IMG/VR virus record: IMGVR_UViG_3300044957_000763
Location: 310,001 to 374,000 of that record
Strand: one strand, 5' to 3'
Length of the DNA stretch: 64,000 nucleotides
Under the pieces are notes generated by a model. The model ran no database searches. It saw only the letters and a list, made by a program, of their open reading frames with translations, and had not been told where the DNA came from. This document shows, piece by piece, positions 10,340 through 59,242 of this stretch (position 1 is the stretch's first letter; every line of letters begins with the position of its first letter). The position numbers were made by a program, and so were the translations under genes.

Positions 10340-10819
10340 ATGGGATTAGACATGTATCTCTCAAAGCGTACCTATGTCAAGAACTGGAGTCACATGAAAC
10401 CAGAAGAGCGACATGAGGTCAGTGTAACTCGTAACGGTTCGACCGTTACTGCTATCAAGCCCGAACGCGTTTCGTACATCGTCGAAGAGGTGGCGTACTG
10501 GCGCAAGGCAAATGCCATTCATGACTGGTTTGTCAAGAACTGTCAGGATGGTGTCGATGAGTGCCAGGAGTCATATGTTTCACGTGAACAGCTTCAGGAA
10601 TTGCTTGACGTTGTCAACGCGATTCTCGCTGCGCCGGCGGGTGAAGAGCGTGACCGTCTGGCCGCTGAGACCCTACCACCTGTGGCTGGTTTCTTCTTCG
10701 GAAGCACGGACATTGACGAGTACTACTACGAGGACCTTGAGTTCACGCAGGAAACTCTGACTGAGCTCTTAGCTGAACCGGACGAAGGCGAAAGATTCAT
10801 CTACCAGTCGTCCTGGTAG
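10340..10819 (+). CDS. conserved phage hypothetical protein (MGLDMYL.../YWRKANAIH type)
   Basis: Start moved to ATG 37 nt after motif 10303. Confidence 0.85.
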   Translation: MGLDMYLSKRTYVKNWSHMKPEERHEVSVTRNGSTVTAIKPERVSYIVEEVAYWRKANAIHDWFVKNCQDGVDECQESYVSREQLQELLDVVNAILAAPAGEERDRLAAETLPPVAGFFFGSTDIDEYYYEDLEFTQETLTELLAEPDEGERFIYQSSW

Positions 10820-10878
10820 AGTAAATCGAGTCCGGGGTTGCGGCCCCGGACTCACGAAATCGAAGAGAAAAAACAATC

Positions 10879-11490
10879 ATGGGAACACGTAACCTAACAA
10901 TCGTTCAATCTAACGGCGAATACAAAGTCGGTCAGTACTGCCAATGGGATGGCTACCCTGCTGGTCAGGGTGTCACTATCCTTGAAGCCCTTTGCAAGAT
11001 GGACATTCTGGCATTCAAGAAGAATGTCGACAATTTGAAGCAACTCACTGCAGATGAAGTGCAAGCATACTGGAAGAAATGCGGTGCTGATGATTCTGGG
11101 TGGGTGAGCTGGGATGTCGCTAACAAATTCAATGAGAAATACCCGCACCTACATCGCGATTTCGGTGGCAAGATTATCGAAGCGATTGCTTCGGGCGAAG
11201 TCAAGGAAGTCTATTCTGATGTGAGTTTTGCCGGCGATGGTCTCTTCTGTGAATGGGCGTATGTCATCGACTTGGACAAGAACACTTTTGAAGTGTACAC
11301 TGGTTTTAGCAAGGGACCAATGAAGCGCGGTGGCCGCTTCAATTCTCTCAAGCGTCGCAAGACGAAGAAAAACCCAGAACCGTACAACCCGGTGAGCCTG
11401 CTTGCTTCTTGGTCTTTGGACTCTCTTCCTACTCAAGAAGAATTCCTTATGCTCGAGAAGTGTGAGGATGAAGAGGAAGTGATGGCATGA
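10879..11490 (+). CDS. conserved phage hypothetical protein (MGTR...QWDGYP type)
   Basis: Motif +38; recognisable MGTR/YCQWDGYP/EWAYVIDLD pattern. Confidence 0.85.
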   Translation: MGTRNLTIVQSNGEYKVGQYCQWDGYPAGQGVTILEALCKMDILAFKKNVDNLKQLTADEVQAYWKKCGADDSGWVSWDVANKFNEKYPHLHRDFGGKIIEAIASGEVKEVYSDVSFAGDGLFCEWAYVIDLDKNTFEVYTGFSKGPMKRGGRFNSLKRRKTKKNPEPYNPVSLLASWSLDSLPTQEEFLMLEKCEDEEEVMA

Positions 11491-11810
11491 CACTCACGCA
11501 AAAAGCACAATACATCGCAAATAAGTGCGCTGACGCGTACTCATTTGACCGCTACAGTTCATGGATGTCCGTGGCTCGAGAATTGCTAAAACTGGGTTGG
11601 AAACCCATTGAGGTTGAGGCATTCATGCGCAGCAAGCACACCAGGTGGGCCGGCGACGTTTCAGGCAAGCCTTACGGTAAGTGCACCGGCAATGACGTGC
11701 TCAGATATCTAGAGAACGAGCGTAATATGCCACGCGGTATTCAAGCGGAGCTGGATGAACTGGTCGCCGGAACTTGGTCTGTTAATGACCAGCCGGTGTA
11801 TCCACTTTAG
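11487..11810 (+). CDS. hypothetical protein
   Basis: ATGA overlap with upstream gene. Confidence 0.75.
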   Translation: MTLTQKAQYIANKCADAYSFDRYSSWMSVARELLKLGWKPIEVEAFMRSKHTRWAGDVSGKPYGKCTGNDVLRYLENERNMPRGIQAELDELVAGTWSVNDQPVYPL

Positions 11811-11850
11811 CGGCCCCGGAAACCAAATTTCGGTCTCTAGATAAGACATC

Positions 11851-12012
11851 ATGAAACCAATCGAACCTACAAAGTTGCTTGTTTCAGCCCACAAGCCTGT
11901 AACTCCTAAGGAGTTCAGACCTGCAGGTTGTTACTGTGATTCAGTCAAGCGACGCTGTGGCGTCTGCAATCGTGACGCCGGCGTCAAAGCCGCGTTGAAG
12001 AGGCCGGTTTAA
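11851..12012 (+). CDS. 53-aa Cys-containing peptide
   Basis: Manual ORF filling the space between motifs 11811 and 12017; CYC...CGVC. Confidence 0.55.
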   Translation: MKPIEPTKLLVSAHKPVTPKEFRPAGCYCDSVKRRCGVCNRDAGVKAALKRPV

Positions 12013-12053
12013 CCACCGGCCCCGGAATCGAGAAGAAGGAAAAAGAAACAGAT

Positions 12054-13343
12054 ATGTCAACAATGACAGTAGTTCAGAACCCGGTCAATGAGACCTATTT
12101 TCGACCATACGACTTCAACATGACCGACGGTCGTCGGGCATATGTTGATGCGAATGGTACATTTCGCACTGCATTTGACGAGACCGCCGATGCTACCCAC
12201 ACCAAGGTGGCTCTAGACTGGCGTGCTCGATGCATTCCTGCGTTGCCGTTGTTCCAGCGTGTTTATGACGCCGCTCAATACAACGTTGACATTCAGACTG
12301 CTGAAAGCAACGTTCGCATCACGAATGACTTGACCCTGCCGGATGGCACCAAGTTCACTCATGGCGGACTGCGGTCTCTGATGTTTTTCGCTGGTATTCC
12401 AATCAAGATGCAGGATTGGCTTGCGATGTACGAATACCTGCCGGACCTAGCACGTTTCTGCAACGAGTCTCTCGACCGTCGCGAAATGGAATGGGCAGAC
12501 AAAGGTAAGCCTGCTCGAAACTTCATGGTTCGAATGCGCAAGGACGAGCATGGTCAGCACGTTGTGCGTGCTGTATTGTCTGGTCAGTATGCGCGATTCG
12601 ACAATCATGAGGCGTGCAAGATGGTGGAGACTGCTTTGTCCACGATGGACGACGTGCTCGTCACTCATGGTTGGACGAACCAAGATTCGCTCATGCTGGA
12701 CTTGCTCTTGCCTGACACGATGAAGGACGACCCTACCAATCAGTGGGGTGTCGGATTCAGCTTCTCGAACAACGAGATTGGTGGTGGCACGTTCAGTGTT
12801 GAGCCGTATGTGTTTCGTTCGATTAATCGCACCGGTTACCGATGGGGTGGATTCTCCACCATCGTCAGTGTTGACCAGCGTCACATCGGACGAATCAACT
12901 ACATCAAACTGCAGGCTGACGTCAAGCGTGCAATTGACATTGCGCTGACCGAAGGTCGTTCGATGTTGAATCTTCTGAGTCTGGCTCAGTCGGTTCGCAT
13001 TAATGACCCGGCTTTGGTTATCTCTGGCTTGTCCAAGGAAGCTAAGCTGACTCAGTCTGACATCGAACTGGTGGCTCGAAAGTACGTTAAGGGTCAGAGT
13101 GACCCGCGAACGAACGGTACTGCATTCGGTGTCGTGGAAGCGATTGCCGTTGCTGCTGCTGACGAGCATGGTGAGCGACGAACAGCACTTGAGGCTTCCG
13201 CTGGACGACTTGTTGCGCCTAAGCTGAATTCGACTGTCTCTGACATCGAAAAGCACTGGGCAGACATTGAGTCCACGGCTGCGCGAAAGGGTGATAAGGA
13301 TGTCATCCAGGCTGTTCGTGACATCTTGAGTGGTGCGAAGTGA
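12054..13343 (+). CDS. DUF932-like protein
   Basis: VRAVLSGQYARFDN and FSNNEIG...HIG resemble the DUF932 family; motif +37. Confidence 0.65.
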   Translation: MSTMTVVQNPVNETYFRPYDFNMTDGRRAYVDANGTFRTAFDETADATHTKVALDWRARCIPALPLFQRVYDAAQYNVDIQTAESNVRITNDLTLPDGTKFTHGGLRSLMFFAGIPIKMQDWLAMYEYLPDLARFCNESLDRREMEWADKGKPARNFMVRMRKDEHGQHVVRAVLSGQYARFDNHEACKMVETALSTMDDVLVTHGWTNQDSLMLDLLLPDTMKDDPTNQWGVGFSFSNNEIGGGTFSVEPYVFRSINRTGYRWGGFSTIVSVDQRHIGRINYIKLQADVKRAIDIALTEGRSMLNLLSLAQSVRINDPALVISGLSKEAKLTQSDIELVARKYVKGQSDPRTNGTAFGVVEAIAVAAADEHGERRTALEASAGRLVAPKLNSTVSDIEKHWADIESTAARKGDKDVIQAVRDILSGAK

Positions 13344-13377
13344 GCACCACTCAAGCACTCTTAAGGGCACGAGGTGC

Positions 13378-14001
13378 ATGGAAATGACAGGCGCGACATT
13401 AATCGTTCGCAAAGGCAATCAGTTTGCCTTGTGCAAGGTGCGATGTGATGGTTACGATTTGCCGAAAGCAATTCCACATATCAACCAGCATCTCGCAAAC
13501 ACACCGACACTGTATTGCCAGGCATTTCTTGCGTATCACATAAAGGATATTGTTCCGACTGAAGCGCAATTCGATGCCTACAATGCGGCTGTTGCGAAAT
13601 ACAACGAAGAGGTCAAGAATCTCACACCAACAGGTGATACTCTTGAAGACTTGATGGCCATGCAGGACTTGCAACGTGCTTGTGGTGTAATGGACGCAAG
13701 TTCTGGAATGATTACCTGGATGTCGCTATTGGAGTTGACCCGCCAAGGACGTCCGTTCGAGTTTGAACTAGATGTTCCAGAAGGGTTAAGCCCGTGGGAA
13801 ATCTATCGTTTAGCTGAAGACAAGGCTGACGAACTGATGGAAGCACTGGGCGAAGAGTTTGAAGATTATCTCTGCTCATATGCAGACTATATCATGTTGG
13901 TAGACCTTGATATTCCTCAGGCATATCAGTTCAACCATTCAGTAGTGGGAGACCACGACGACCGAATCGAGACAGGAAAAAACGAAAATGGGACGCACTA
14001 A
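13378..14001 (+). CDS. hypothetical protein
   Basis: ORF with GAGGTG SD; DGY...DYIMLVDLD loosely resembles 10879 product. Confidence 0.7.
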   Translation: MEMTGATLIVRKGNQFALCKVRCDGYDLPKAIPHINQHLANTPTLYCQAFLAYHIKDIVPTEAQFDAYNAAVAKYNEEVKNLTPTGDTLEDLMAMQDLQRACGVMDASSGMITWMSLLELTRQGRPFEFELDVPEGLSPWEIYRLAEDKADELMEALGEEFEDYLCSYADYIMLVDLDIPQAYQFNHSVVGDHDDRIETGKNENGTH

Positions 14002-14488
14002 GATTATGCGCAACTACAAAGACGCTCGCGATTTCGTTCGCGGGCTTGGACTCAAGGACACGGCTGCATGGCATGCCTATGCGGCTAGTGACCAGCGACC
14101 GAAGGACATCCCGGTGAATCCGTGGGTGGCTTATCGAAGCTACTTCGCCCAGACCGGCGAGAAGTTCTCGATTAACGACTTCATTGGTGCACGCGCCAAG
14201 CGTGGTCGACCGCGCAAGGACGAAAATCGTGGTACACCGGTGAAGACCGCGAAGACCGCGAAGCAGAAGACCGAGGTGCAGAAGAGTGCATACGAGATGG
14301 CGAAGGATATCGTGCGTGGGCTCAATTTGAAGAGTCGCGCCGCCTTCACCGAGCTCTCGAAGAATGGCGGCCGCCCCGAGGGTGTGCCAGCTCGCCCAGA
14401 CCTCACCTTTGCGGGTGACGAATGGGAAGGTTGGGCCGCATTCCTTGGCAATGCGCCGGCACCTGAGCGGGAGCTCGTCAACGCTTAA
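13988..14488 (+). CDS. putative DNA-binding protein: two integrase-repeat-like units plus an AT-hook
   Basis: Two Y..A...VRGL.LK....P...P..P units flanking KRGRPRK. Confidence 0.65.
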   Translation: MGRTKIMRNYKDARDFVRGLGLKDTAAWHAYAASDQRPKDIPVNPWVAYRSYFAQTGEKFSINDFIGARAKRGRPRKDENRGTPVKTAKTAKQKTEVQKSAYEMAKDIVRGLNLKSRAAFTELSKNGGRPEGVPARPDLTFAGDEWEGWAAFLGNAPAPERELVNA

Positions 14489-14535
14489 CCTTTATGCCCC
14501 GAGACCACATGGTCTCGGGGCTATCGGTGTTTATC

Positions 14536-15036
14536 ATGACGATTAACAACGCTTTTAACCAAATTGCGGCCGTGGTGGCCGAGCTTATTCTCATCATCGA
14601 CCGAGAAATCGGCGCGATGGAGATGCTCGATAACACCGGGGCCAAGAGTACATTCATCGAGGCTAAGAACGAACTCCAGGCCTCGACCGGTGGTAGCGGC
14701 TTTGCCGGCGGAGTCAGGATGTTGAATGCCATCAACACGTGTGCTAAAGCATTCGAAGAGCGCTCGTGTACAGAATCTGAAACACCTGAATATTGGCTAT
14801 ATCATGCCTATGAATTCCGCCGGAGTGCTGAGCACGCGGCTACTGATTTGTTGCACACTGTTGGTTGCGCTCCACAATTCGAGCGTTCATTGGCCGGTTT
14901 GCGAATCAGTTGCGCCTATCTTGCGAAGCAACTGGGTTATCGCGACGCGACCATGAGGTTCGCTCAAGGTGCCCTGCGTTTAGCGGCCCCGGAATCAGAT
15001 ATCGAACTTGTGAGAAAAGTAATGCAACCGCATTAG
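14536..15036 (+). CDS. hypothetical protein
   Basis: ATG after hairpin 14496-14521; motif 14984 lies inside the 3' end. Confidence 0.65.
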   Translation: MTINNAFNQIAAVVAELILIIDREIGAMEMLDNTGAKSTFIEAKNELQASTGGSGFAGGVRMLNAINTCAKAFEERSCTESETPEYWLYHAYEFRRSAEHAATDLLHTVGCAPQFERSLAGLRISCAYLAKQLGYRDATMRFAQGALRLAAPESDIELVRKVMQPH

Positions 15037-15045
15037 GAGAAAGAA

Positions 15046-16143
15046 ATGCAAATCGCTGGATACTCATTTGAAAATCCGACGCGACACGTATACCTGCACC
15101 TTTACAATCCGAGCGCAAACCATGACAAGGTCTATCACATTGTTGCTGACAAGAACAGTGAAGGCAAAGTCCAGGTCTCGGTAATGTGGGGTCGGCGTGG
15201 AAGTTCGCTTCGGCACATGGTGAAAACCAAAGACAGGAATCAGCCCGCTTACCTATCAGAATGGTCGGCTAGAGCCGTATTTGATAAGTTGCTTGGCGAA
15301 CAAATCAAAGGTGGTTATGAGGTGAAAAACGATGAAACGTTTACACCTGGTGCCCCGGTCGTCGTCAACGAAATCGAAATCGAGTCTGAAGAGAGCACAT
15401 TAATCTGGCCTCCGCGTTCATACGCTGAGAACCCGGTTCGTGCTACGGTCGTCAATCATGACTTTGAGCTCGCTGGTTATGGTATCGTGCTCCTGCCGGA
15501 AGGCAAGCGCATTATTACCCTGATTGAGAAGGACAAGAATAAGTTCTTCGACCAACATGGGGCTGAAATCACTGTCGAACAATCGCTGTTCAACGCGGTC
15601 TATGACCTTGAAGACAACACGATTATCGACGGGGTGTGGGATGGTGACCGCTACTTTGTGTTTGACATGCCTGGTGAGAGTGATTACACAGACCGCATCA
15701 AATCCTTGGCAGAGTATATTGACGGAACGGTCGATGAAAACGTGGTCCAGATGGCTGACATCTATCTAACCACGGCCGAGGCCCAGATGGCTGTGACCGA
15801 TGCTCGTGAGCGCGGCGCGGCGACTATTCTGGGTATTTTGATGTCCGGCGGAGAGCGGCCTGGACAGAACGACAAGTCACGAGTGATGTTAAGTTTGCGG
15901 CCCCGGGCTGTGCTTTGCGTGATGAAAACTGGTAGCGCATTTGCCACACTCGGAGTTGACGACGGGCTCGGACTTATCGAAGTCGGGTCGTTCTTAATTC
16001 CAGAAGACATCAAGGCTGGAGACAGCGTTCTTGTCGAGTACGATTCTTGGGATGGTCACGGAAGTGAACTCAAGAAGCCTGTGTTCATCAAGAAAGTAGA
16101 CCAGGGAACCGACTGCTCAATCGAACAACTGCTCGCGGTGTAA
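15046..16143 (+). CDS. WGR-domain protein fused to a degenerate ATP-dependent ligase/OB fold
   Basis: DKVY...WGRRG; LPEGKR in place of KxDG.R; IIDG, YFVFD. Confidence 0.7.
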   Translation: MQIAGYSFENPTRHVYLHLYNPSANHDKVYHIVADKNSEGKVQVSVMWGRRGSSLRHMVKTKDRNQPAYLSEWSARAVFDKLLGEQIKGGYEVKNDETFTPGAPVVVNEIEIESEESTLIWPPRSYAENPVRATVVNHDFELAGYGIVLLPEGKRIITLIEKDKNKFFDQHGAEITVEQSLFNAVYDLEDNTIIDGVWDGDRYFVFDMPGESDYTDRIKSLAEYIDGTVDENVVQMADIYLTTAEAQMAVTDARERGAATILGILMSGGERPGQNDKSRVMLSLRPRAVLCVMKTGSAFATLGVDDGLGLIEVGSFLIPEDIKAGDSVLVEYDSWDGHGSELKKPVFIKKVDQGTDCSIEQLLAV

Positions 16144-16170
16144 TATCCGCGAGCAGGGAGACTCGCGGAT

Positions 16171-17217
16171 ATGAAAAACAAAAACCAATACCTCAATGCT
16201 GATGGTGAGTATTTCGAAGTCGAAGGCAGTGAGGCGTATTACATGACAGAAGATGAATTATGTGACGCTTCAGACTTATTTCAAAACGAACTCCAAGATA
16301 TCAAAATGGATTTGCAAGACTTGGTGCACCGATGGATGGGTCATGCGAACTTCGTTTGGGCTACTCTAACACCTGACCACCTGACCGAATTAAACGCTCG
16401 GTGTGGGTATATCAAGAAGAACATTGGGTTATTTCTCGAAGACGTGTATCGAGTGCTAGGAACTCGTGGTTCAGACAGTTATTACCAAACAGCGGCTGAT
16501 TACGAAGATGAGATTTACTGCAATCACGAATTCGAGTTGAACTTGATGCAAGTGATTCAGAAGTCTTTCGAGTTCAGTTCTGGACAAAGCCAAGGTATGG
16601 ATGGCATCATTGACCTTGAATGGTTTGAACAGAAGTATGCTGGCACATGGATGCGTCGATTGTTAAATCCGGTGGCTGTCAAGCCTTGGAATATGCCTGC
16701 TGCGCCTGCTTTTATTGTGCCTGAGCGGCCGCGAGTAATTCTAAAGGTACTGTCGATAGCAGACTGTGCGCCACGAATCTCCGTAGGCCTCGATGACATC
16801 TTCTGCGATAAACCAATCGGCACTGGAATCCTAGTTGATGACGATGTGCGCGTAGGTGACAGAGTCATTATCAAGACCAGTGGTTGGAAAGGCTTGGGTC
16901 ACGAGATGGAAAAGCCAGAATACGACGGCTTGGCTGAGCGAGATTGTCCATGTTCTGACATGGTTGAGGTCATGGAAGCTAAATATAACTTCGACCTTGA
17001 GTTTGAACTTGAAAGACATGAAGCACAATGGCGTAAGTCATTTCTGGAAAAGCATTTCACACTCCGTACAGAAGGAGAAATCAAGGAATCCGGCAAACGT
17101 ACATGCAACATGATTGGAGAGCGAGAAGTGCGGCACCCGGTCGAGCTTTTTGGCAAAAACTATGAGCCAGAATACTACAACCATGAGCCAGAATACTACA
17201 ACTACGAAGACAAATAA
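16171..17217 (+). CDS. hypothetical protein with ligase OB-like remnant
   Basis: RPRVILKV...VGDRVII...GHEMEKP resembles the C-terminus of 15046 product; 21-nt tandem repeat at the 3' end. Confidence 0.7.
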   Translation: MKNKNQYLNADGEYFEVEGSEAYYMTEDELCDASDLFQNELQDIKMDLQDLVHRWMGHANFVWATLTPDHLTELNARCGYIKKNIGLFLEDVYRVLGTRGSDSYYQTAADYEDEIYCNHEFELNLMQVIQKSFEFSSGQSQGMDGIIDLEWFEQKYAGTWMRRLLNPVAVKPWNMPAAPAFIVPERPRVILKVLSIADCAPRISVGLDDIFCDKPIGTGILVDDDVRVGDRVIIKTSGWKGLGHEMEKPEYDGLAERDCPCSDMVEVMEAKYNFDLEFELERHEAQWRKSFLEKHFTLRTEGEIKESGKRTCNMIGEREVRHPVELFGKNYEPEYYNHEPEYYNYEDK

Positions 17218-17258
17218 TCCCGGCCCCGGAGCCGGGATTGTCTACTTTTGAACAAACC

Positions 17259-17948: not shown

Positions 17949-17987
17949 CCGGCCCCGGAAACGGAAATCTGAGGAAAATCAAACAAC

Positions 17988-51366: not shown

Positions 51367-51382
51367 TTCAATCTAAAACATC

Positions 51383-51787: not shown

Positions 51788-51805
51788 ACGGGGTTCCTTC
51801 AAATC

Positions 51806-52132: not shown

Positions 52133-52139
52133 ACTTACA

Positions 52140-52469
52140 ATGAACATCACAATGAGTCCAATGAATTTCATCGAATTCGACACGACGCCGGCAAACGAAT
52201 CGTGCGTTAGTGTCAGCAAGACCGAGGAATACATGCCTGCAATGCGGGCTGAAGCCAATCGTATGAAGGAGTTGCTTGAAAAGCGGTTCCCTGATGTGAA
52301 TGGGTACTTCACAATCAAGAGCATTACACACGACTTTGGTTCGTACCTCGAGATGCGCTTCTACTACGAGGACAACGACGCAGGCATTAAGGAGATGCAA
52401 CACGTCGAAGCGAACTACCCTCAAACGTGGTTGGACGCCGAACCCGTTTTGCTGTACGCCACGACTTAA
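52140..52469 (+). CDS. conserved phage protein (HDFGSY.E type)
   Basis: Motif +39. Confidence 0.75.
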   Translation: MNITMSPMNFIEFDTTPANESCVSVSKTEEYMPAMRAEANRMKELLEKRFPDVNGYFTIKSITHDFGSYLEMRFYYEDNDAGIKEMQHVEANYPQTWLDAEPVLLYATT

Positions 52470-52514
52470 AACCCAACCGGCCCCGGAGCTACCGCTCCGG
52501 GGCTTTTTTCATTC

Positions 52515-52835
52515 GTGCTAAAACTTCCAAGCAACATCCCTCTGCTCTATGCCACTAAAAAAGTGGATGCTGACCACAAGACCATCCACGCTCGCCTGTT
52601 TGCTCTCGGTTGTAACGCAACCTGGTTGATTGCGGAGTATGACCCCAAGAAAAAACTGGCTTACGGCTATTGTGACCTATACGGTCAAGGTCGAGAAGGT
52701 GGTGCTGAATGGGGGTACGTCTCCATCGAAGAACTGGAATCGCTCAAGTTCATGGGCATTCCCCGTGTCGAGGTTGACGCGCACTTCACACCCAAGCCGT
52801 TCAAGGATTGCGTGCGACCTGACGGTCGCATCTAA
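52515..52835 (+). CDS. DUF2958-like protein
   Basis: ATWLIAEYD...YG.CDL...EWGYVSIEEL...E.D.HF; GTG at motif +37. Confidence 0.75.
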   Translation: MLKLPSNIPLLYATKKVDADHKTIHARLFALGCNATWLIAEYDPKKKLAYGYCDLYGQGREGGAEWGYVSIEELESLKFMGIPRVEVDAHFTPKPFKDCVRPDGRI

Positions 52836-52881
52836 ACAAACCCCGGTCCCGGAACCAAAGTTTCGGGAACTTTTTTCATTC

Positions 52882-53052
52882 ATGCCGAAAACAAAGAAAC
52901 GCTGGTATATCAAGTTTCCGCTCGATGCTTACGCACTTGGACCCATTGAGGCAGATAGCGAAGCCGATGCGCGGCGCTGGGCACGAGAGTTCTCCGGCGT
53001 CAAGCGATTGCCTGCCGGGTTCGAGTGTTGGGAAACCGGTCCCGGATTTTAA
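52882..53052 (+). CDS. hypothetical protein
   Basis: Motif +38. Confidence 0.65.
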   Translation: MPKTKKRWYIKFPLDAYALGPIEADSEADARRWAREFSGVKRLPAGFECWETGPGF

Positions 53053-53215
53053 TGGCTAATCACAAACGAAAGAAATGCAAGCGGTCGACCCGTACCATTA
53101 CAGGTAACCGGTCTAACATGACGGGCAACAGCGAAAGCAAAGCATACGGTCACCACAAGGCTGGAGTGCGATGCGCTCGAAACGTCCGCAACAGACTCAC
53201 ACAGGAGGAACTATA

Positions 53216-53401
53216 ATGCCAGTTGAAATCGGACTTGCTGATGCTATCGAAGAGGTGCTGCGCACTGGTGCTGCCGACATCTACTACGATTCCTCGTTCG
53301 ATACCACGGAGGACATCGCAGAAGGCGCAACACACTCCAAAGGTGTCCAAAGACACCAGGAAGCACTGCAACGTCTCAAAGAGGCGTATAACAGCCAATA
53401 A
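53216..53401 (+). CDS. hypothetical protein
   Basis: GGAGG SD; TAATG overlap. Confidence 0.65.
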   Translation: MPVEIGLADAIEEVLRTGAADIYYDSSFDTTEDIAEGATHSKGVQRHQEALQRLKEAYNSQ

Positions 53402-53443
53402 GAGCCGGCCCCGGAAATCCGGGGTTGGCCAATCTATTCAACC

Positions 53444-53698
53444 ATGCCGAAACCAAGAAAGCCAATTCGTGTAAGTCACACACCACCACTCCGACCAGGG
53501 TGGTATGCGTATAGCCACTGTGGTGGCGAGTTTGAAGCAGTCAAGCTGGCACAAGCTGACGTAGACGACGCACAAAGCCGCTATAAGTTATCCGTATTGC
53601 TCGACTTACCTTTTGTCGATGTCTGGAGCACGCGAAAGCTGAAGAAGCGCGAGTATGATTGCAACCGGTCCCAGAATCACTCAACTTGTGCGGCATAA
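53444..53698 (+). CDS. hypothetical protein
   Basis: Motif +38. Confidence 0.65.
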   Translation: MPKPRKPIRVSHTPPLRPGWYAYSHCGGEFEAVKLAQADVDDAQSRYKLSVLLDLPFVDVWSTRKLKKREYDCNRSQNHSTCAA

Positions 53699-53704
53699 CC
53701 CATC

Positions 53705-53875
53705 ATGGTAATCAGCTTCAAGTGCCCACATTGCAAGGAACAAGTGCCACGTGACATCAAGCAAAGAACGCGTGGAACGCGATATGCCATTCTGTTTGAC
53801 TGCCCTCGATGCCGGAGAACAATTCACATCGAGGGAATCGCCCAACAATCGCCGCCTAAGGTTGTAAAACTGTAG
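53705..53875 (+). CDS. 56-aa zinc-ribbon protein
   Basis: Manual ORF with CPHC...CPRC; variant motif CGGTCCCAGA 39 nt upstream. Confidence 0.65.
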   Translation: MVISFKCPHCKEQVPRDIKQRTRGTRYAILFDCPRCRRTIHIEGIAQQSPPKVVKL

Positions 53876-53914
53876 GCGGCCCCGGAAAACAAAAACCCAG
53901 AAAACAAAAACATC

Positions 53915-54265
53915 ATGCGAAAAGCATTAACGCTCATCGAGCTACTTATCGCCACATTCATCGCCGCTATCTTGATTACGGTGATACTTGCCGGAATTCG
54001 TGGTTGCACCACCCAAGGTGTCGCTGCAGAAGACTCTATGCGGGAGTATGTAAGCAGGCTGTATCCTGGCCGCGAGGTCATTGGTGTTGCTTGCACCAAC
54101 ATGGACACTGACGGCGACGGTTACATCAGTTGCACCGCAACCATCGACATCGACAACGGACCGAATGTCGTGGAAAGACAAATCAATGCCCAGTGTGCAA
54201 CAGGACTCTTGTCCTTCAACAGTGGTTGTAAGGCTGCGATTCCTCAAGCATATCCACAACAGTAA
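53915..54265 (+). CDS. prepilin-type N-terminal cleavage/methylation domain protein
   Basis: MRKA|LTLIELLIA (E+5), hydrophobic helix, Cys residues, DTDGDG; motif +38. Confidence 0.7.
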   Translation: MRKALTLIELLIATFIAAILITVILAGIRGCTTQGVAAEDSMREYVSRLYPGREVIGVACTNMDTDGDGYISCTATIDIDNGPNVVERQINAQCATGLLSFNSGCKAAIPQAYPQQ

Positions 54266-54308
54266 CCTACCGGCCCCGGAGTTCCGTGCTCCGGGGCTTT
54301 TCTCATTC

Positions 54309-54503
54309 ATGCCAAGTTGCGAACGCTGCCAAAAGCCAACAAACGTCACAATTATGTCCATGTTCAATACCCAAACCATTTGCATGGACTGCAAGGACTC
54401 GGAGAAGAAACATCCGAAGTACAAAGAGGCACAGCAAGCCGAACTTGAAGCCGTAAAAGCCAATAACTACAACTTCCAAGGAATCGGATTTCCGGGCAAC
54501 TGA
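54309..54503 (+). CDS. small zinc-finger phage protein (C.RC...MSMFNT..IC..C)
   Basis: Motif +38. Confidence 0.75.
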   Translation: MPSCERCQKPTNVTIMSMFNTQTICMDCKDSEKKHPKYKEAQQAELEAVKANNYNFQGIGFPGN

Positions 54504-54544
54504 ACCCGGCCCCGGAAGCCCAAATCAGGGCAACATTACACATC

Positions 54545-54697
54545 ATGAGCAAGAAGCAAAAAGCACAAAAGCCCGCCTACACCCCGGTGCCCTTCACACG
54601 GGCACACTCCAAGCCACATCGACTTGAGGAGAACAGTCGTGCCCGACGAAAGCGCGAAGAACGCGATGCCAAGAACGGCAACTGGAGACAGGATTGA
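54545..54697 (+). CDS. 50-aa basic peptide
   Basis: Manual ORF at motif +38; TTGA overlap with next gene. Confidence 0.6.
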   Translation: MSKKQKAQKPAYTPVPFTRAHSKPHRLEENSRARRKREERDAKNGNWRQD

Positions 54698-55065
54698 TAA
54701 CTGAGTTCAAAGGTGAAAGGGGACAATTCTCAGTATGCCATGATGGTGAAACGCGGAGTCTTCAGGCTATCGTGTATGCATTGGAACCACCGGATGAGTT
54801 CGGAGTCAAACACAAGGAACCAATTGACTGGCGATTAAGTGAGAAAAATCATTCACCGACCGGCCTTGAATGGGGATATGGTGGCTCCGGACCAAGCCAA
54901 CTTGCATGGTGTCTGCTTCGTGAATGTGGACTGACAAAACCCCAGACAGAAGCACTCTATATGCGATTCAAAGCAGATGTAATAGCTAACCTGCCGCGAG
55001 AAGGCTTTACCCTGACAAAGAAACAAGTGATGGACTGGGTCAAGAAAAGCGGCCCCGGAAAGTAA
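54694..55065 (+). CDS. DUF6166-like protein
   Basis: HSPTGLEWGYGGSGPSQLA. Confidence 0.75.
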   Translation: MITEFKGERGQFSVCHDGETRSLQAIVYALEPPDEFGVKHKEPIDWRLSEKNHSPTGLEWGYGGSGPSQLAWCLLRECGLTKPQTEALYMRFKADVIANLPREGFTLTKKQVMDWVKKSGPGK

Positions 55066-55086
55066 ACCGTGGCATACTCATCAAGC

Positions 55087-55362
55087 ATGCCACGATACAC
55101 ACTCGACACACCAAGTCAGCACTTGCTGAACCAGAAGGATAAGGACATCACCTACTACGGTATCCTGCTGGACGGCAGGGTGCAGATTACTGGTGCCCTG
55201 TTTAATAGCAAGGCACAAGTTGTCAAGGCTATCAAAAAGCTCAACAATGCCATCGAGCAAGGCTTGCCCAAGGTAGAGGTCGAAATTCATCGCGGAATGT
55301 ACTTGTGGGACTTGCAAGAGCACAATCAAGGCATACCCGTAAAAGGTGTGGAAGTGTCCTGA
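55087..55362 (+). CDS. hypothetical protein
   Basis: Motif +37. Confidence 0.65.
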   Translation: MPRYTLDTPSQHLLNQKDKDITYYGILLDGRVQITGALFNSKAQVVKAIKKLNNAIEQGLPKVEVEIHRGMYLWDLQEHNQGIPVKGVEVS

Positions 55363-55430
55363 CTGTGGACACTCTGTCACCAAATGAAACAATCGGTCCC
55401 GGAGCTTAGGCTCCGGGACTTTTTTGCTTT

Positions 55431-55730
55431 ATGAGAAACATCCTCACGAGAAAAGTCTTGTTTCCAGTATGGTTGCTGTGCTTACTGGTCATGGCTGATA
55501 CAGCATGGACTATTTGGGTTGTCCATCGCGAACTAGCTATCGAAGCCAATCCACTGATGGCACACCTGGTCAATTACAATGTGCCAGCTTTTGTTGCCAT
55601 CAAAACTAGTGTTGTGCTTGCGTTTGCCGTAATGCTCGAACTCATACCCGACCAACGACGCAAGAACAGATTCGCACATACAGCATTTGGATTGTTTGTT
55701 GTGCTATACTGTATCTGGAGTATTTGTTAA
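55431..55730 (+). CDS. DUF5658-like membrane protein
   Basis: D...T......EANPLM......F...K; motif +37. Confidence 0.7.
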   Translation: MRNILTRKVLFPVWLLCLLVMADTAWTIWVVHRELAIEANPLMAHLVNYNVPAFVAIKTSVVLAFAVMLELIPDQRRKNRFAHTAFGLFVVLYCIWSIC

Positions 55731-55774
55731 AAATTCGGCCCCGGAATCCCAAAACAACACAAACCCAAAAGAGT

Positions 55775-55984
55775 ATGAAGAAAATTCAACGCATCGCCAC
55801 TACCCTTGGTATTCCGGCGAATGAAATCACCAAAGCCGAGCGTAAAGCTATTCAAAAAGCCAACTCGGCCACTGAAGTTTGTCGAATACTTGGGGTCGAA
55901 GTCGCCGGTAATGTACAATATGTGCAAGCCGCTATGAAGCGACCGAAGAAAAAGAAAACGCAGGTGTATGCGTATGCCGCGTAA
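55775..55984 (+). CDS. small basic protein
   Basis: Motif +39. Confidence 0.65.
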   Translation: MKKIQRIATTLGIPANEITKAERKAIQKANSATEVCRILGVEVAGNVQYVQAAMKRPKKKKTQVYAYAA

Positions 55985-56170
55985 AGGAGGACACAAATGA
56001 CACTACAAAGCTCAGGATGTATGTTCATTCTTGGAATGATATTCTGTGGAATTTTCTGGGGTGGACAAGGCGTGTTTTGGTGGGTGATTGCAAGCATCAT
56101 CATAACCATTTTGGAATCCGATAAAATCTAAGCGACCCCGGAACCACCAAGACCACTGAATCAACAAATC

Positions 56171-56545
56171 ATGTGGAAAACACAGCAACAAGCCGACACC
56201 TTCAACCGATGCCTTGATGGCGCAAAGCAGACAGGATTCAACGGTTGTATCACTTATGCCAACAAAGCAGACGCTGACAAGGCTTGCGCCACGCTCGTGC
56301 CGACGATTGATGAGGCGTATGAACTAACAGCCCATCAGGGCAAAGTCTATGCCGAAGTCAACCAAGAGTACATGAGCGAACCACGTTTGCGAGTTACAGG
56401 GTTTCTCGAAGCTATCATCGACACCAACCCGGTGAGTGCCGAGTTTGAAGCCGAGGGCGAGGATGGTGAGCAGTATCAGATACACTTTGAGTCTGGCAAA
56501 TGGGTGCTACTTCAACGCCCTTACAACTTCACAGAGGTAGCCTAA
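56171..56545 (+). CDS. hypothetical protein
   Basis: Variant motif +38. Confidence 0.75.
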   Translation: MWKTQQQADTFNRCLDGAKQTGFNGCITYANKADADKACATLVPTIDEAYELTAHQGKVYAEVNQEYMSEPRLRVTGFLEAIIDTNPVSAEFEAEGEDGEQYQIHFESGKWVLLQRPYNFTEVA

Positions 56546-56586
56546 GATGCGGTCCCGGAACTTCGGTTCCGGGACTTTTTTTATTC

Positions 56587-56751
56587 ATGCCAACAGCAAA
56601 AACACTCAGGGAACTTGGCGAAATCATCACCAAAAACTTTTCGCAGGAAAGCATTCGCGAAGGGTACCAAATCGACCCCGCCGACTTGGAAGAAGTTGGT
56701 CGCCAAGCATTACTCTTTGGCGACATTCAACAAGACGGGACACTCAATTAG
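56587..56751 (+). CDS. hypothetical protein
   Basis: Motif +37. Confidence 0.65.
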   Translation: MPTAKTLRELGEIITKNFSQESIREGYQIDPADLEEVGRQALLFGDIQQDGTLN

Positions 56752-56794
56752 GCGGTCCCGGAACCCGGACTAATTCGGACTCCCAACAAGCATC

Positions 56795-57175
56795 ATGAAG
56801 ACATGGCTAAGTGACGAGGACGCCAAGGCAATCTGCCGACATCGTGCGAAGTCAAACGATTACATTCGACGTCAATTGTCCTCGGGCACCCAAGTACCAC
56901 GAGCAACTTGGATGCAATGGGCACACGAATACGATGCCGTCCGTACAATCCTTCAGACACTTGCTAGAGTCTGTGACGGCGCAAAGTCGCACGATGGATG
57001 CGGGTTTAACAAACACGATTCAAGGAAAGGGAAGCAACTTGCTTATCAATCCGAACTTACGAACGAGGAATTTTGGATTGGAGTCAGAATCGTCCGCAAG
57101 TATCACCAACAAATAAACCCGGCACTAATGGCGTGGATACCCCGGTCCCGGAAGTCCAATAGTCCGGGTTCCTAA
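56795..57175 (+). CDS. hypothetical protein (CDGA...DG.GFNK.D...KYH.Q type)
   Basis: Motif +42. Confidence 0.75.
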   Translation: MKTWLSDEDAKAICRHRAKSNDYIRRQLSSGTQVPRATWMQWAHEYDAVRTILQTLARVCDGAKSHDGCGFNKHDSRKGKQLAYQSELTNEEFWIGVRIVRKYHQQINPALMAWIPRSRKSNSPGS

Positions 57176-57180
57176 CTCAC

Positions 57181-57498
57181 ATGAGTGAAACAGAAAACTC
57201 AGCCGACCGCTTCATCAAGTGGTTGGACTCAATCGCCAATTCAACGCTCGGCAAAATCGGGGTGTCAAAAGGATTCCATATCTGGCACTCAGGTGGTGGT
57301 TGCCATCACTTCCGAAAGGACGCCGAGAACGGGTGCTACGTTCTTGTGTGCCACGAGGGGGAGATTCCTGAAACCGACCCAGGTATTTGGATGGTGGGAA
57401 CCTACGACGCCGAAGGCGAGGAAATCCACGTTCTTGACCTCGAATACACGCTTGAGGAAGCGTTGGACTCGGCAAGCAAGTTGCTTGCCGAAGTCTGA
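57181..57498 (+). CDS. hypothetical protein (HSGGGC)
   Basis: Motif +38. Confidence 0.75.
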   Translation: MSETENSADRFIKWLDSIANSTLGKIGVSKGFHIWHSGGGCHHFRKDAENGCYVLVCHEGEIPETDPGIWMVGTYDAEGEEIHVLDLEYTLEEALDSASKLLAEV

Positions 57499-57560
57499 AA
57501 ACCACCGGTCCCGGAACCCCGAAAAGCGGGGTTCCCTAGCAATGTCCTAAGGAAAGGAAA

Positions 57561-57869
57561 ATGAGTCGACACACAACCAACACCAGCAAGTTCGAAATCG
57601 TACTCGGAGTAGACCGACCGCTCAATCATGTGTTCGCGTCGGTTTTCGACCGAAAAGGCGAAGATGCCAAGGGTTTTGACCCGTTCTCGTGGTTCGCTCC
57701 GACTTCCGCCGGCGTCGAAGATGCTATCAAGGCGGTTGAAGGATTTACCAAGTCAAAGTTGCCCGAAAGCATCAGGGAGGCACTGCTGGCTGACCTGATG
57801 GCTATGCAGGAAGGTCAAAGCATCAACTATTCCAAGACCCACGGTGCTGCCCTGTTCGGGTTCGCATAA
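57561..57869 (+). CDS. hypothetical protein (G.DRPL..F type)
   Basis: AGGAAAGG SD. Confidence 0.75.
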   Translation: MSRHTTNTSKFEIVLGVDRPLNHVFASVFDRKGEDAKGFDPFSWFAPTSAGVEDAIKAVEGFTKSKLPESIREALLADLMAMQEGQSINYSKTHGAALFGFA

Positions 57870-57936
57870 CCCTCCGGTCCCGGAACCCCGATAACGGGGT
57901 TCCTCTACTTCATCACCACGAAAGGTGAAACGAATC

Positions 57937-58224
57937 ATGGAAGATAACAAGACAGGTTTTCAACTATGCCTGGAGCGTGCCGCCGTCAAGGTAGCATGGG
58001 GCATTCTCGTCACTACTATGGCACTCCCCACTGCATGGAAGTGGGCGGTCGCCATCGACCCTGATGGCATCTTGGGCGTCACGATTGCGCTTGGCTTCCT
58101 TGGAAGCGTTGCGCTAACGCCACTGATGCTTGGATGCGGGTTCGCATCCGATGACTTGCGCAAGGCACGACGTATATGGCGTGCTTCACGACCAAGCCGG
58201 TCCCGGAACCACCGAATCGGCTAA
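57937..58224 (+). CDS. small membrane protein
   Basis: Two hydrophobic segments. Confidence 0.65.
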   Translation: MEDNKTGFQLCLERAAVKVAWGILVTTMALPTAWKWAVAIDPDGILGVTIALGFLGSVALTPLMLGCGFASDDLRKARRIWRASRPSRSRNHRIG

Positions 58225-58277
58225 ACCACTTATCATCGCCAAGCAAGAAAGCAAAGCGATAAAGGAGCAACAACACA

Positions 58278-58475
58278 ATGATGAAGGTTCTTAAATTTGA
58301 CGCAAAGACTGGTGTAGCCACCATCGAACTTCAACTCGACATGAAAGGTCGCCCGTCGACCTCTGGCAAGACCACCGTTCACTTCAGCACGAACGGAAAC
58401 CAGCGCGTTGATGAAATCCAGGTGGGCGGTCGCCCGTTGGTCATCGGCATCAACGCCTACACTCCCAAGGGGTAA
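58278..58475 (+). CDS. conserved small protein (PS.SGKT...ST.GN type)
   Basis: AAGGAG SD. Confidence 0.75.
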   Translation: MMKVLKFDAKTGVATIELQLDMKGRPSTSGKTTVHFSTNGNQRVDEIQVGGRPLVIGINAYTPKG

Positions 58476-58549
58476 CACCTATATCGCCGGTCCCGGAACC
58501 CGCCTAGTGCGGGTTCCCCTACAATGTCCCAAGGGACAGGAGCAACACG

Positions 58550-58789
58550 ATGCCAAAGCAAGACACAAGTATCGTCAATGCCGTTGCACAATACACGCAA
58601 CGCCAGACTCGTCAGCAGGTCAAAAGGTTGCTGATTCGTGCCGATAAACTCAACGGCGACCGGCTTGCCCGCATCCCTGGTGCCGGGGATGAGTTACGCA
58701 AGCTCTTGGACAAAGTCGCAACCTTAGACCAAAAGGCTGCCCATGATTTTGCCGTGAGCATCGGGTGGGGCGACCGAATCCCCGCATAA
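58550..58789 (+). CDS. hypothetical protein
   Basis: AGGAG SD in the extended leader. Confidence 0.7.
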   Translation: MPKQDTSIVNAVAQYTQRQTRQQVKRLLIRADKLNGDRLARIPGAGDELRKLLDKVATLDQKAAHDFAVSIGWGDRIPA

Positions 58790-58854
58790 ATCGCCGGTCC
58801 CGGAACCCCGCTAGGCGGGGTTCCCTAGCAATGTCCCAAGGGACAGGAGGCACC

Positions 58855-59070
58855 ATGAAGGTAGTTGATATTAGCCTGACCGCAACGTCGGAAGGCACGC
58901 TTGTCAATCTCCGCAACGCTCTCGGCCAACGCGTTGCGAAAACCCACTTGCCAGGATGCGGGGACTTTAACGTCCTCGGTTGCGATGTCATGGTCAAGAT
59001 GCCGGCAAACCTCGTCCGCTCGCTTCTGAAAGGGAAGGGTGCATACATCACGACCAACAAGACCGCCTAA
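58855..59070 (+). CDS. hypothetical protein
   Basis: GGAGG SD; in-frame upstream ATG at 58831. Confidence 0.7.
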   Translation: MKVVDISLTATSEGTLVNLRNALGQRVAKTHLPGCGDFNVLGCDVMVKMPANLVRSLLKGKGAYITTNKTA

Positions 59071-59137
59071 TCGCCGGTCCCGGAACCCCGCCTAGCGGGG
59101 TTCCCTACCAATGTCCCAAGGGACAGGAGGAACAAGC

Positions 59138-59242
59138 ATGAAACTCGCCATCTCCCTCGTCGTAGTCTACGGACTGGTCTTTCACACGACCATGACCGTT
59201 GTCATCGTTGTCGCGTTAGCGGTAATCAAGGCGATGAAATAA
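59138..59242 (+). CDS. 34-aa hydrophobic peptide
   Basis: GGAGG SD; in-frame upstream ATG at 59111. Confidence 0.55.
   Translation: MKLAISLVVVYGLVFHTTMTVVIVVALAVIKAMK

What the first reader, a model, noticed from the sequence alone, without database searches (positions are those of the whole stretch)
10340..59242. Array cargo looks like a large early host-takeover / anti-defence library
Seen: >100 mostly small, often acidic or zinc-binding proteins and no structural or core replication genes. Recognisable types (DUF932-, YubB/DUF1281-, DUF3085-, DUF2958-, DUF6166-, YodL- and Gam-like) are, as I recall, typical of phage early regions and plasmid leading regions, which are enriched in anti-defence genes. 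Inference: a ready-delimited candidate pool. The motif also reveals ORFs under 60 aa that the ORF track missed (11851, 42870, 53705, 54545).
Basis: partly seen in the sequence, partly recalled or inferred. Interest (0 to 1): 0.6.

Follow-up and report, generated by a model that had tools for sequence, protein, structure and literature searches.

The report
Megaphage promoter-tagged array of small genes
A 479-kb lake-water phage carries a 49-kb run of about 100 small genes, each tagged by the same 12-base signal exactly 36-37 bases before its start codon. Some of the cargo is typical of plasmid and phage establishment regions, and blocks are swapped at the tags, but an anti-defence role is still only a plausible guess.

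Summary
Window 10.3-59.3 kb holds about 100 co-oriented, mostly small ORFs with no structural or replication genes.

- **Families:** DUF3085, DUF2958, DUF6166 and DUF1281_C are confirmed. DUF932 holds only by transitive homology. YodL is below cut-off. Gam is absent.
- **"Acidic" and "zinc-binding":** both are overstated.
- **Architecture:** 80 copies of CGGYCCCGGA occur only here in the 478,840-bp genome, and most lie 36-37 nt before an ATG. That is the -35 position of a leaderless mRNA. About 20 copies also form terminator hairpins.
- **Sigma factor:** a phage sigma gene sits 3 kb upstream. I infer a sigma-directed delayed-early or middle regulon, not shown.
- **Not loose cargo:** the array is a conserved trait of a megaphage clade. 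70 of 104 ORFs are collinear in a relative whose sigma is 77% identical, and about 30 recur in a 46% relative.
- **Variable third:** it changes in cassette-sized blocks bounded by the motif. One 8-gene block is flanked by direct repeats. This resembles the PeSLs of T4-type phages.
- **Anti-defence:** no validated anti-defence family was found and no RNA data exist, so that reading is plausible for part of the array but unproven.
- **Small ORFs:** three of the four named (11851, 42870, 54545) are conserved and look real.

The parts
6232..7089 (+). Phage sigma-70-family factor (285 aa), next to a radical-SAM gene (5545-6192). Candidate reader of the array motif.
   Evidence: Sigma70_r2 at 24.9 bits (over cut-off) plus weak r4 and r4_2. 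The radical-SAM, sigma, array synteny is kept in relatives with 77%, 57% and 46% sigma identity.
9043..9071 (+). Consensus sigma-70 promoter (TTGACA, 17 nt, TATAAT with TG) at the head of a 1.2-kb non-coding stretch.
   Evidence: Read directly from the sequence.
9134..9203 (+). tRNA-Gln (UUG).
   Evidence: ARAGORN and Rfam.
10203..10245 (+). Terminator-like hairpin followed by an extended -10 promoter (TGCTATACT) just before the first motif copies.
   Evidence: Read from the sequence.
10264..59254 (+). The array: about 80 copies of CCGGYCCCGGA(A/G) and about 100 co-oriented ORFs. GC is 0.51 and GC3 is 0.55, against 0.43-0.44 and 0.42 in the rest of the genome.
12054..13343 (+). Divergent DUF932-family protein (429 aa), among the best-conserved large array proteins (93% identical in the 77%-sigma relative; 65% in the Armatimonadetes-MAG phage, whose sigma is only 46% identical).
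   Evidence: AF2 pLDDT 91, with no solved fold match.
11851..12012 (+). 53-aa basic Cys-rich protein missed by gene callers and conserved in all relatives examined.
   Evidence: 81-94% identity in relatives; 17 synonymous against 3 non-synonymous changes.
15046..19136 (+). WGR protein (15046-16143), a 348-aa unknown, DUF7227/GP88 (17259-17948) and a WGR plus ATP-dependent NHEJ-like ligase (17988-19136).
21391..21918 (+). DUF1281_C (Api92-like) protein. Absent from the 77% relative, present in the 46% relative.
23988..27172 (+). MoxR/CobS-like AAA+ ATPase (393 aa) plus CobT-like VWA protein (635 aa). The pair is shared with many other phages.
30326..36015 (+). DUF4241 (30326), GHKL ATPase HATPase_c_3 (31187-32848), DUF6915 (33775-34479) and DUF6927 (35479-36015).
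37345..40150 (+). Second DUF7227 (37345), DUF3085 (38232-38648), a 194-aa unknown and a class I SAM methyltransferase (39272-40150).
38691..40798 (+). Three-gene block replaced by different genes in the 77% relative. Both ends lie in motif-hairpin units.
46467..51040 (+). Eight-gene 4.6-kb block absent from the relative. It is flanked by direct repeats of the roughly 40-nt motif-hairpin-T-run unit, and the relative has one copy.
52515..55730 (+). DUF2958 (52515-52835), a variable six-gene block (52882-54503), the 50-aa ORF 54545, DUF6166 (54694-55065) and DUF5658 (55431-55730).
6874..6883 (-). Reverse-strand copy of the motif inside the sigma gene. A second copy lies at 7309-7318.
   Evidence: These are the only copies outside the array.

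Best explanation
**What it is.** The stretch is a clade-conserved regulon of about 100 autonomous one-gene (sometimes two- to four-gene) units in a 479-kb freshwater megaphage.

**How each unit is built.** It opens with CCGGYCCCGGA(A/G) at -38 to -27 relative to the start codon. An A/T-rich stretch follows at -11 to -6, then ATC-ATG. This puts the motif where a -35 element lies if transcription starts on the A of the ATG. The mRNAs would then be leaderless, like the TGnTATAAT-N6-ATG genes elsewhere in this genome.

**Terminators.** In about 20 units the motif is also the 5' arm of a GC hairpin followed by a T run. That hairpin would terminate the preceding unit.

**Who reads it (inferred).** Host RNA polymerase, redirected by the phage sigma factor encoded 3 kb upstream. 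The array would then be a delayed-early or middle class.

**Cargo.** Non-structural and non-replicative. About 80% has no Pfam family. The rest mixes families shared with conjugative plasmids and ICEs, an NHEJ-like ligase, a MoxR/VWA pair, a GHKL ATPase, a methyltransferase and zinc ribbons. The most likely role is host takeover and establishment, and some units probably counter host defences (inferred by association only).

**Evolution.** Two thirds of the units are a stable core. One third turns over by recombination between the repeated motif units, as with the PeSLs of T4-type phages.
For: - **Exclusivity and strand bias:** 80 copies on the + strand, all in the array, against 0.18 expected.
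- **Fixed spacing and logo:**
- **Same initiation context outside the array:** Y(-1)A(+1)TG, with a 6-fold peak of TATAAT at N6 before an ATG.
- **No host-type promoters inside the array:** 16 sigma-70-like sites found against 14.3 expected. Terminator-like sites number 43 against 23.5.
- **The hairpin is optional, the motif is not:** hairpin plus T run in about 20 units, hairpin alone in about 27, none in about 36.
- **Hairpins are under selection:** compensatory changes keep them between relatives.
- **Sigma gene adjacent, with synteny kept:**
- **Motif and spacing persist in relatives:** the same motif in the 77% relatives; CCGGCCTCGGAAC in the 57% relative; GGCCCCRGA about 40 times, on one strand, in the 46% relative.
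- **Cargo families:**
- **Plasmid bias of DUF3085:**
- **Turnover at the motif:** 70 of 104 ORFs are collinear orthologues. There are 28 indel or replacement events, and 75% of breakpoints lie within 60 nt of a motif against 20% at random. An 8-gene block is flanked by direct repeats.
Against: - No transcript data exist. No listed run is on record as RNA, so the start site, the sigma dependence and the timing are all inferred.
- The -10 region has no conserved hexamer.
- The genome encodes three sigma factors. Only proximity and synteny link this one to the motif.
- No unit matches a validated anti-defence protein.
- DUF2958 shows no conjugative-plasmid bias.
- Breakpoints near motifs are partly expected, because motifs mark gene boundaries.
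- The higher GC and GC3 of the array are not explained by this model.
Confidence: 0.55

Rival explanations
1. The motif acts in RNA, not DNA. It would be a processing site, a protein-binding site or a translation enhancer at a fixed distance from the AUG. The array would be transcribed as long polycistronic RNAs from the sigma-70-type promoter at about 10.24 kb, with the hairpins acting as attenuators or stabilisers.
For: - A strong host-type promoter sits directly before the first motif.
- There is no Shine-Dalgarno sequence, so some special initiation aid is needed.
- Strand specificity fits RNA as well as DNA.
Against: - About 20 units carry full intrinsic-terminator hairpins with T runs directly before the next ATG. 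Those would stop a polycistronic transcript.
- The motif occupies exactly the -35 window of a leaderless start, and the same genome uses TATAAT-N6-ATG leaderless promoters.
- A site 36 nt upstream lies outside a ribosome footprint (general knowledge).
Confidence: 0.15
2. The array is a foreign island: a plasmid- or ICE-derived segment, or an assembly chimera, inserted into the phage, with no programme of its own.
For: - GC is 0.51 against 0.43-0.44, and GC3 is 0.55 against 0.42.
- The cargo includes plasmid-type families.
Against: - The same array lies at the same locus, with the same flanking genes, in relatives on contigs of 212 kb, 220 kb and 1.36 Mb. One of those relatives has no GC contrast.
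- Array proteins diverge about as much as the sigma factor does.
- Four lake-water runs, each from its own sample and study, hold all of the sampled words, and further runs hold most or part of them. The four full holders may include the sample the window was assembled from.
- No integrase, relaxase or oriT-type gene appears in the public gene tables.
Confidence: 0.08
3. The cargo mainly serves conflict with other mobile elements, or superinfection exclusion. It would be defence rather than counter-defence.
For: - There are weak PADLOC hits: WGR_XIII twice, mad2 at 2e-11, and IetA, BrxF and TRIP13 through the AAA domain.
- A GHKL ATPase and a MoxR/VWA pair also occur in defence systems.
Against: - Apart from mad2 (2e-11, on a protein I did not map) and two WGR_XIII matches (best 6.4e-9), the hits are weak, and the IetA, BrxF and TRIP13 hits probably run through the shared AAA+ domain. 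No complete known system is present.
- The MoxR/VWA pair is widespread in lytic phages.
Confidence: 0.12
4. Most units are late or virion-associated small proteins, for example injected internal proteins.
For: Nothing direct. Injected counter-defence proteins exist in other phages (general knowledge).
Against: - No structural family was hit.
- The array lies between blocks of host-type early promoters.
- The large, conserved ORFs of the genome lie at 1-135 kb and 400-478 kb. They may include the structural genes, but I did not annotate them.
Confidence: 0.04

Closest known systems
PeSLs (promoter-early stem-loops) in the hyperplastic regions of T4-type phages (Arbiol et al. 2010, PMC2839356; Comeau et al. 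2014, PMC4122927)
   Same: - Composite terminator hairpin plus promoter units repeat between small, mostly unknown genes.
- Indels and replacements between close relatives are bounded by the repeats.
- A proposed role in swapping accessory genes for adaptation to hosts.
   Different: - The conserved element here is a GC-rich 12-mer at the -35 position, not a sigma-70 early promoter.
- The mRNAs appear to be leaderless.
- A dedicated phage sigma gene is adjacent.
- There are about 80 units in one 49-kb block.
- Two thirds of the units are conserved core.
- The phage is a 479-kb non-T4 megaphage.
Anti-defence islands in the leading regions of conjugative plasmids (Samuel et al. 2024, PMC11541004)
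   Same: - Co-oriented runs of small genes with special promoters.
- Some families are shared or co-located: DUF3085 lies beside ParB, a zincin protein and ssb on a plasmid.
   Different: - There is no oriT, relaxase, ssb, psiB, ardA or klcA here.
- Frpo promoters are about 300-nt single-stranded DNA structures that mimic sigma-70 promoters, and are unlike this 12-mer.
- No validated anti-defence gene was detected.
Phage sigma-cascade or middle-promoter regulons (T4 MotA/AsiA box at -30; SPO1 gp28)
   Same: A phage-specified element replaces the -35 hexamer and switches host polymerase to a block of phage genes.
   Different: Neither the factor nor the start sites have been shown here, and the leaderless layout and terminator overlap are not features of those systems.
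Integron cassette arrays
   Same: A long co-oriented array of small, diverse, mostly unknown genes separated by a repeated site that contains an inverted repeat.
   Different: - No integrase was found nearby.
- The repeat lies upstream of each gene at a fixed distance from the ATG.
- Each unit seems to have its own promoter.
- Turnover looks like homologous recombination between repeats.

Membership tests
PeSL-type mobile regulatory cassettes | The intergenic unit combines a terminator stem-loop with a promoter. | tested here: met
   About 20 units carry an 11-bp GC stem, a T run and then the next ATG. About 27 more have a hairpin without a T run. The promoter function is inferred from position only.
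PeSL-type mobile regulatory cassettes | The promoter is a host sigma-70 early promoter. | tested here: not met
   The logo shows CCGGYCCCGGA at -38 to -28 and no TATAAT. Sigma-70-like sites are not enriched.
PeSL-type mobile regulatory cassettes | Indels between close relatives are bounded by the repeats. | tested here: met
   An 8-gene block is flanked by direct repeats, with a single copy in the relative. 75% of 56 breakpoints lie within 60 nt of a motif, against 20% at random.
Plasmid leading-region anti-defence island | Lies next to oriT and the relaxase, on the transferred strand, with ssb, psiB, ardA or klcA. | tested here: not met
   None of these families appears in the Pfam, PHROGs or NCBIfam scans or in the public gene tables.
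Plasmid leading-region anti-defence island | Contains experimentally validated anti-defence genes. | tested here: not met
   No such family was hit. No dedicated anti-defence library was available, so distant or structural matches remain untested.
Integron | An IntI tyrosine recombinase and attI lie beside the array, and attC sites lie 3' of promoterless cassettes. | tested here: not met
   No integrase domain appears in the gene tables for window 5-63 kb. The repeat is tied to the downstream ATG.
ECF-type sigma promoter | A -35 GGAAC element, a 16-17 nt spacer and a -10 CGT-type element. | tested here: inconclusive
   GGAAC or GGAGC is part of the motif but lies at -30 to -26. No conserved -10 element is seen. 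The sigma factor is very divergent; the best PDB hits are sigma-F at E 0.007 and CnrH at E 0.03.
DUF932 (PF06067), for gene 12054-13343 | Matches the family model. | tested here: inconclusive
   There is no direct match, even at E up to 5. However, 58 of 101 homologues match (best 7.8e-11), and the language-model search gives 0.97 with 28 of 30 neighbours in DUF932 clusters.
YodL (PF14191), for gene 41176-41517 | Score over the gathering cut-off. | tested here: not met
   20.1 bits against a cut-off of 24.
Gam (PF06064 or PF07352) | Matches the family model. | tested here: not met
   No match in the whole genome at E up to 0.1.

The most novel reading that the evidence does not exclude
The array is a phage counterpart of an integron. 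It would be a gene-cassette store addressed by a sigma factor, in which one short element serves three purposes: promoter for a leaderless mRNA, terminator arm, and recombination site. The store would let a megaphage clade collect, shuffle and co-express plasmid-type establishment and counter-defence genes.
Probability: 0.3. Interest if true: 0.8.

Novelty: new variant of a known kind. Interest (0 to 1): 0.62.

Why it matters
- **A ready-made candidate set.** The motif marks gene starts that gene callers miss or misplace. It therefore delimits about 100 co-regulated non-structural genes in an uncultured 479-kb phage. Comparison with relatives splits them into a conserved core (about 70) and a variable set (about 30). 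Expression screens against defence systems should begin with the variable set.
- **A testable promoter model.** If the motif is a promoter for a phage sigma factor driving leaderless mRNAs, this would be an unusually clean natural regulon, with 80 near-identical promoters in one genome. It could be tested in vitro with the sigma factor and core polymerase.
- **Wider reach of repeat-mediated shuffling.** The result extends PeSL-type cassette shuffling beyond T4-type phages.
- **Unknown families in a new setting.** Plasmid-enriched families of unknown function (DUF3085, DUF932, DUF2958, DUF6166, DUF1281) are placed in a phage programme.

Tried and rejected
- **Close DNA relatives in GenBank phages:** none.
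- **Motif-plus-spacing pattern across IMG/VR:** 45 contigs with one match each, consistent with chance; no second array.
- **Related loci in IMG/VR using the DUF6915 protein and the sigma factor:** no close relatives. Relatives came only from the large protein index.
- **Laying contigs of four lake runs on window 40.1-46.0 kb:** the phage was nearly identical there (one single-base difference in each of two runs). All loose ends were cross-mapping between repeat copies, and the one "joint" had only 21 nt on one side. This gives no evidence of population variants.
- **T7-like RNA polymerase (PF00940):** no hit, but the control did not respond either, so this is uninformative.
- **PDB sequence searches for the GHKL ATPase, DUF7227, the WGR protein and the DUF932-like profile:** nothing.
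- **Fold searches with the pLDDT-91 model of the DUF932-like protein:** Foldseek best E 0.04 and VIA-align best Z 5.4, so there is no credible fold match.
- **Atlas search for the acidic 134-aa protein at 19194:** only viral hypothetical proteins.
- **Paralogy inside the array:** slight, with five pairs. The array did not arise by amplification.
- **Genetic code:** no alternative code was needed or used.

Full report
**Source.** The window is bases 310,001-374,000 of a 478,840-bp IMG/VR virus record with direct terminal repeats, rated 100% complete by CheckV. Four lake-water metagenome runs, each from its own sample and study, hold all of the sampled words. Further runs hold 0.94, 0.63, 0.42 and smaller shares. 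The four full holders may include the source sample. None of the listed runs is on record as RNA. No GenBank phage is close at the DNA level.

**The observation.** About 100 + strand ORFs tile window 10.3-59.3 kb.
- I listed 104. A few gap-filling ORFs of 36-52 aa are doubtful.
- Median length is 114 aa, against 174 aa for ORFs elsewhere in the genome.
- 35% of the 104 motif-anchored array ORFs have pI below 5 (30% in the automated ORF set used for the genome comparison), against 22% of that set genome-wide, and 28% are basic.
- Only 6 have two or more CxxC pairs.

"Small" is therefore correct, "often acidic" is a mild enrichment, and "often zinc-binding" is overstated.

**Family content.**
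- Bulk scans of all 104 proteins against Pfam, PHROGs, NCBIfam and PADLOC, plus gene-by-gene Pfam tables from public gene calls, found no virion or replisome family.
- About 19 proteins (18%) carry a Pfam family:
  - WGR (two proteins)
  - WGR fused to an NHEJ-like ATP-dependent ligase
  - DUF7227/GP88 (two proteins)
  - DUF1281_C
  - a MoxR/CobS-like AAA+ ATPase with a CobT-like VWA protein
  - DUF4241
  - a GHKL ATPase (HATPase_c_3)
  - DUF6915 and DUF6927
  - DUF3085
  - a class I SAM methyltransferase
  - DUF2958, DUF6166 and DUF5658
  - zinc ribbons

YodL is below the cut-off. Gam is absent from the whole genome.
- DUF932 is not hit directly. However, the 429-aa protein at 12054 has 417 representative homologues. 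Of 101 scanned, 58 match PF06067. A language-model search also points to DUF932. It is a divergent member of that family.
- Its AlphaFold model is confident (pLDDT 91) but has no solved structural relative.

**The array architecture.**
- CGGYCCCGGA occurs 80 times on the + strand, all between window 10,264 and 59,373. It occurs nowhere else on that strand of the genome. Chance expectation is 0.18.
- In 60 units the ATG lies exactly 36 or 37 nt after the GG of the motif. In 72 units it lies within 31-45 nt.
- The logo shows CCGGYCCCGGA at -38 to -28, an A/T-rich stretch at -11 to -6, ATC at -3 to -1, and no Shine-Dalgarno sequence.
- Outside the array, mainly at genome 140-320 kb and on both sides of the array, many genes carry TGnTATAAT exactly six bases before the ATG. 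A pyrimidine sits at -1. That is the geometry of leaderless mRNAs made from extended -10 host-type promoters.
- By the same geometry the array motif sits at the -35 position of a transcript that starts on the ATG.
- Sigma-70-like sites are not enriched inside the array (16 against 14.3 expected). Terminator-like sites are enriched (43 against 23.5), and the best of them are the motif hairpins.
- Folding each unit gives about 20 with a hairpin and T run, about 27 with a hairpin only, and about 36 with none. The 12-mer is therefore the conserved signal, and the hairpin is an optional second function.
- The C/T position of the motif changes together with its pairing partner, both within the array and between relatives. 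The hairpins are thus under selection.

**A sigma factor next door.**
- The genome encodes three sigma-70-family proteins. One is at window 6232-7089, 3 kb upstream of the array, beside a radical-SAM gene.
- Between it and the array lie a consensus sigma-70 promoter, a tRNA-Gln gene and an extended -10 promoter.
- I infer that this sigma factor directs host polymerase to the motif. The array would then be a delayed-early or middle class. This step is not shown.

**Relatives.**
- The sigma protein has homologues of 87-44% identity in metagenomes.
- Contigs carrying the 77%, 57% and 46% homologues keep the same gene order: radical-SAM gene, sigma gene, non-coding stretch, array.
- The two 77% relatives use the same motif.
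- The 57% relative uses CCGGCCTCGGAAC at the same +37 spacing.
- The 46% relative has about 40 one-strand copies of GGCCCCRGA in about 55 kb, against a background of about 26 in the other 3.7 Mb.
- I walked 51 kb along one 77% relative. It has 69 motif copies, 56 of them at +36 or +37.
- 70 of the 104 window ORFs have collinear orthologues there, at 49-96% identity. About 30 are still recognisable in the 46% relative, some in a different order.
- The small ORFs 11851, 42870 and 54545 are conserved. 11851 shows 17 synonymous against 3 non-synonymous changes. None of the three is in the public gene calls. ORF 53705 lies in a block the relative lacks.

**Turnover at the motif.**
- The window and the relative differ by 28 indel or replacement events of 150 nt or more. 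75% of the window breakpoints lie within 60 nt of a motif, against 20% for random positions.
- Part of that excess is expected, because motifs mark gene boundaries.
- The clearest case is the eight-gene block 46467-51040. It is flanked on both sides by the same roughly 40-nt unit of motif, hairpin and T run. The relative has one hybrid copy at that point. This is the signature of recombination between repeats.
- The published PeSLs of T4-type phages behave in the same way (PMC2839356, PMC4122927).

**Does the cargo look like anti-defence?**
- In favour:
  - DUF3085 matches 602 plasmid records, 481 of them conjugative, against one phage record.
  - On an Acetobacter plasmid it lies between ParB-like, zincin (ArdC-like) and ssb genes.
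  - It is the family most enriched in broad-host-range plasmids, and its function is unknown (PMC12826799).
  - Leading regions are enriched in anti-defence genes (PMC11541004).
- Against:
  - DUF2958 shows no such bias.
  - DUF7227/GP88 is a phage family.
  - The MoxR/VWA pair is common in other phages.
  - No validated anti-defence family is hit.
  - PADLOC hits are mostly weak, and several look like AAA+ domain cross-hits.
  - Most of the array is conserved core.
- The anti-defence reading is therefore reasonable for some units, especially the variable third, but it rests on association only.

**Unexplained.** The array has GC 0.51 and GC3 0.55, against 0.43-0.44 and 0.42 elsewhere in the genome. 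The 77% relative shows a smaller contrast and the other two show none. Synteny across the clade argues against a recent foreign insertion or an assembly chimera.

**Verdict.**
- The object is a new variant of a known kind: PeSL-like promoter-terminator cassettes, here with a non-sigma-70 motif, leaderless starts and an adjacent sigma gene, in one 49-kb block of a megaphage clade.
- Transcript mapping and expression screens are needed to decide function.

Noticed in passing
window 380-1714: A 444-aa ORF is built of about 12 tandem 78-nt (26-aa) repeats. It has only faint Pfam matches (Phage_FRD3, DUF982).
   Followed up: partly
window 6874-6883 and 7309-7318, minus strand: These are the only two copies of the array motif outside the array. 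They lie antisense, inside the sigma gene and inside the gene after it. They may give antisense feedback on the sigma factor.
   Followed up: no
window 9000-10260; also L075 5573-6830 and L080 11449-12895: A 1.2-kb non-coding stretch holds strong sigma-70 promoters, a tRNA-Gln gene and a box GAAAACGACCTGAAG that recurs after promoters in distant relatives. Unannotated small RNAs may be encoded here.
   Followed up: partly
genome 140-320 kb and window flanks (for example 4460, 7108, 8023, 62300): TGnTATAAT sits exactly 6 nt before the ATG, with a pyrimidine at -1. This marks a class of leaderless genes with host-type extended -10 promoters. On the + strand 24 cases have a spacing of 6 nt, against 3-8 at other spacings.
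   Followed up: partly
G001:C5 1-532,000 (GCA_018268375.1, Armatimonadetes MAG contig of 1.36 Mb): The first 531 kb or so is collinear with the whole of this phage genome, at GC 0.53-0.56. GC then steps up to 0.60-0.62. The junction lies at groEL/groES, which the phage also encodes (genome 135.8-137.8 kb; GroEL E 3e-196). This is either an assembly join through groEL or a prophage. It gives a host lead to Armatimonadota.
   Followed up: partly
window 10264-41148 versus 41526-59084: The motif is GGCCCCGGA throughout the first 31 kb and mostly GGTCCCGGA after 41.5 kb. The orthologous units of the relative keep C. This suggests concerted evolution or gene conversion among neighbouring units.
   Followed up: partly
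relative contig Ga0364482_10084 (L076 12936-13532; L078 13462-13935): GIY-YIG and HNH homing-endonuclease genes are inserted in the relative's array but are absent from the window.
   Followed up: no
window 31187, 37345, 40196, 53444 and others: Public gene calls often pick a downstream start or miss the gene altogether. For example, the 200-aa ORF at 40196 is called as 85 aa, and the 84-aa ORF at 53444 is not called. Without a Shine-Dalgarno sequence, the motif gives the better start.
   Followed up: partly
window 10264-59254: GC3 is 0.55 in the array against 0.42 in the rest of the genome. This is unexplained. It is not due to the motif itself, which makes up only about 1 kb.
   Followed up: partly
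window 57144-59105: The last six or seven units use a different hairpin (GGAACCCCG...CGGGGTTCC), formed by the 3' half of the motif. Three of them share a 65-nt intergenic repeat.
   Followed up: no
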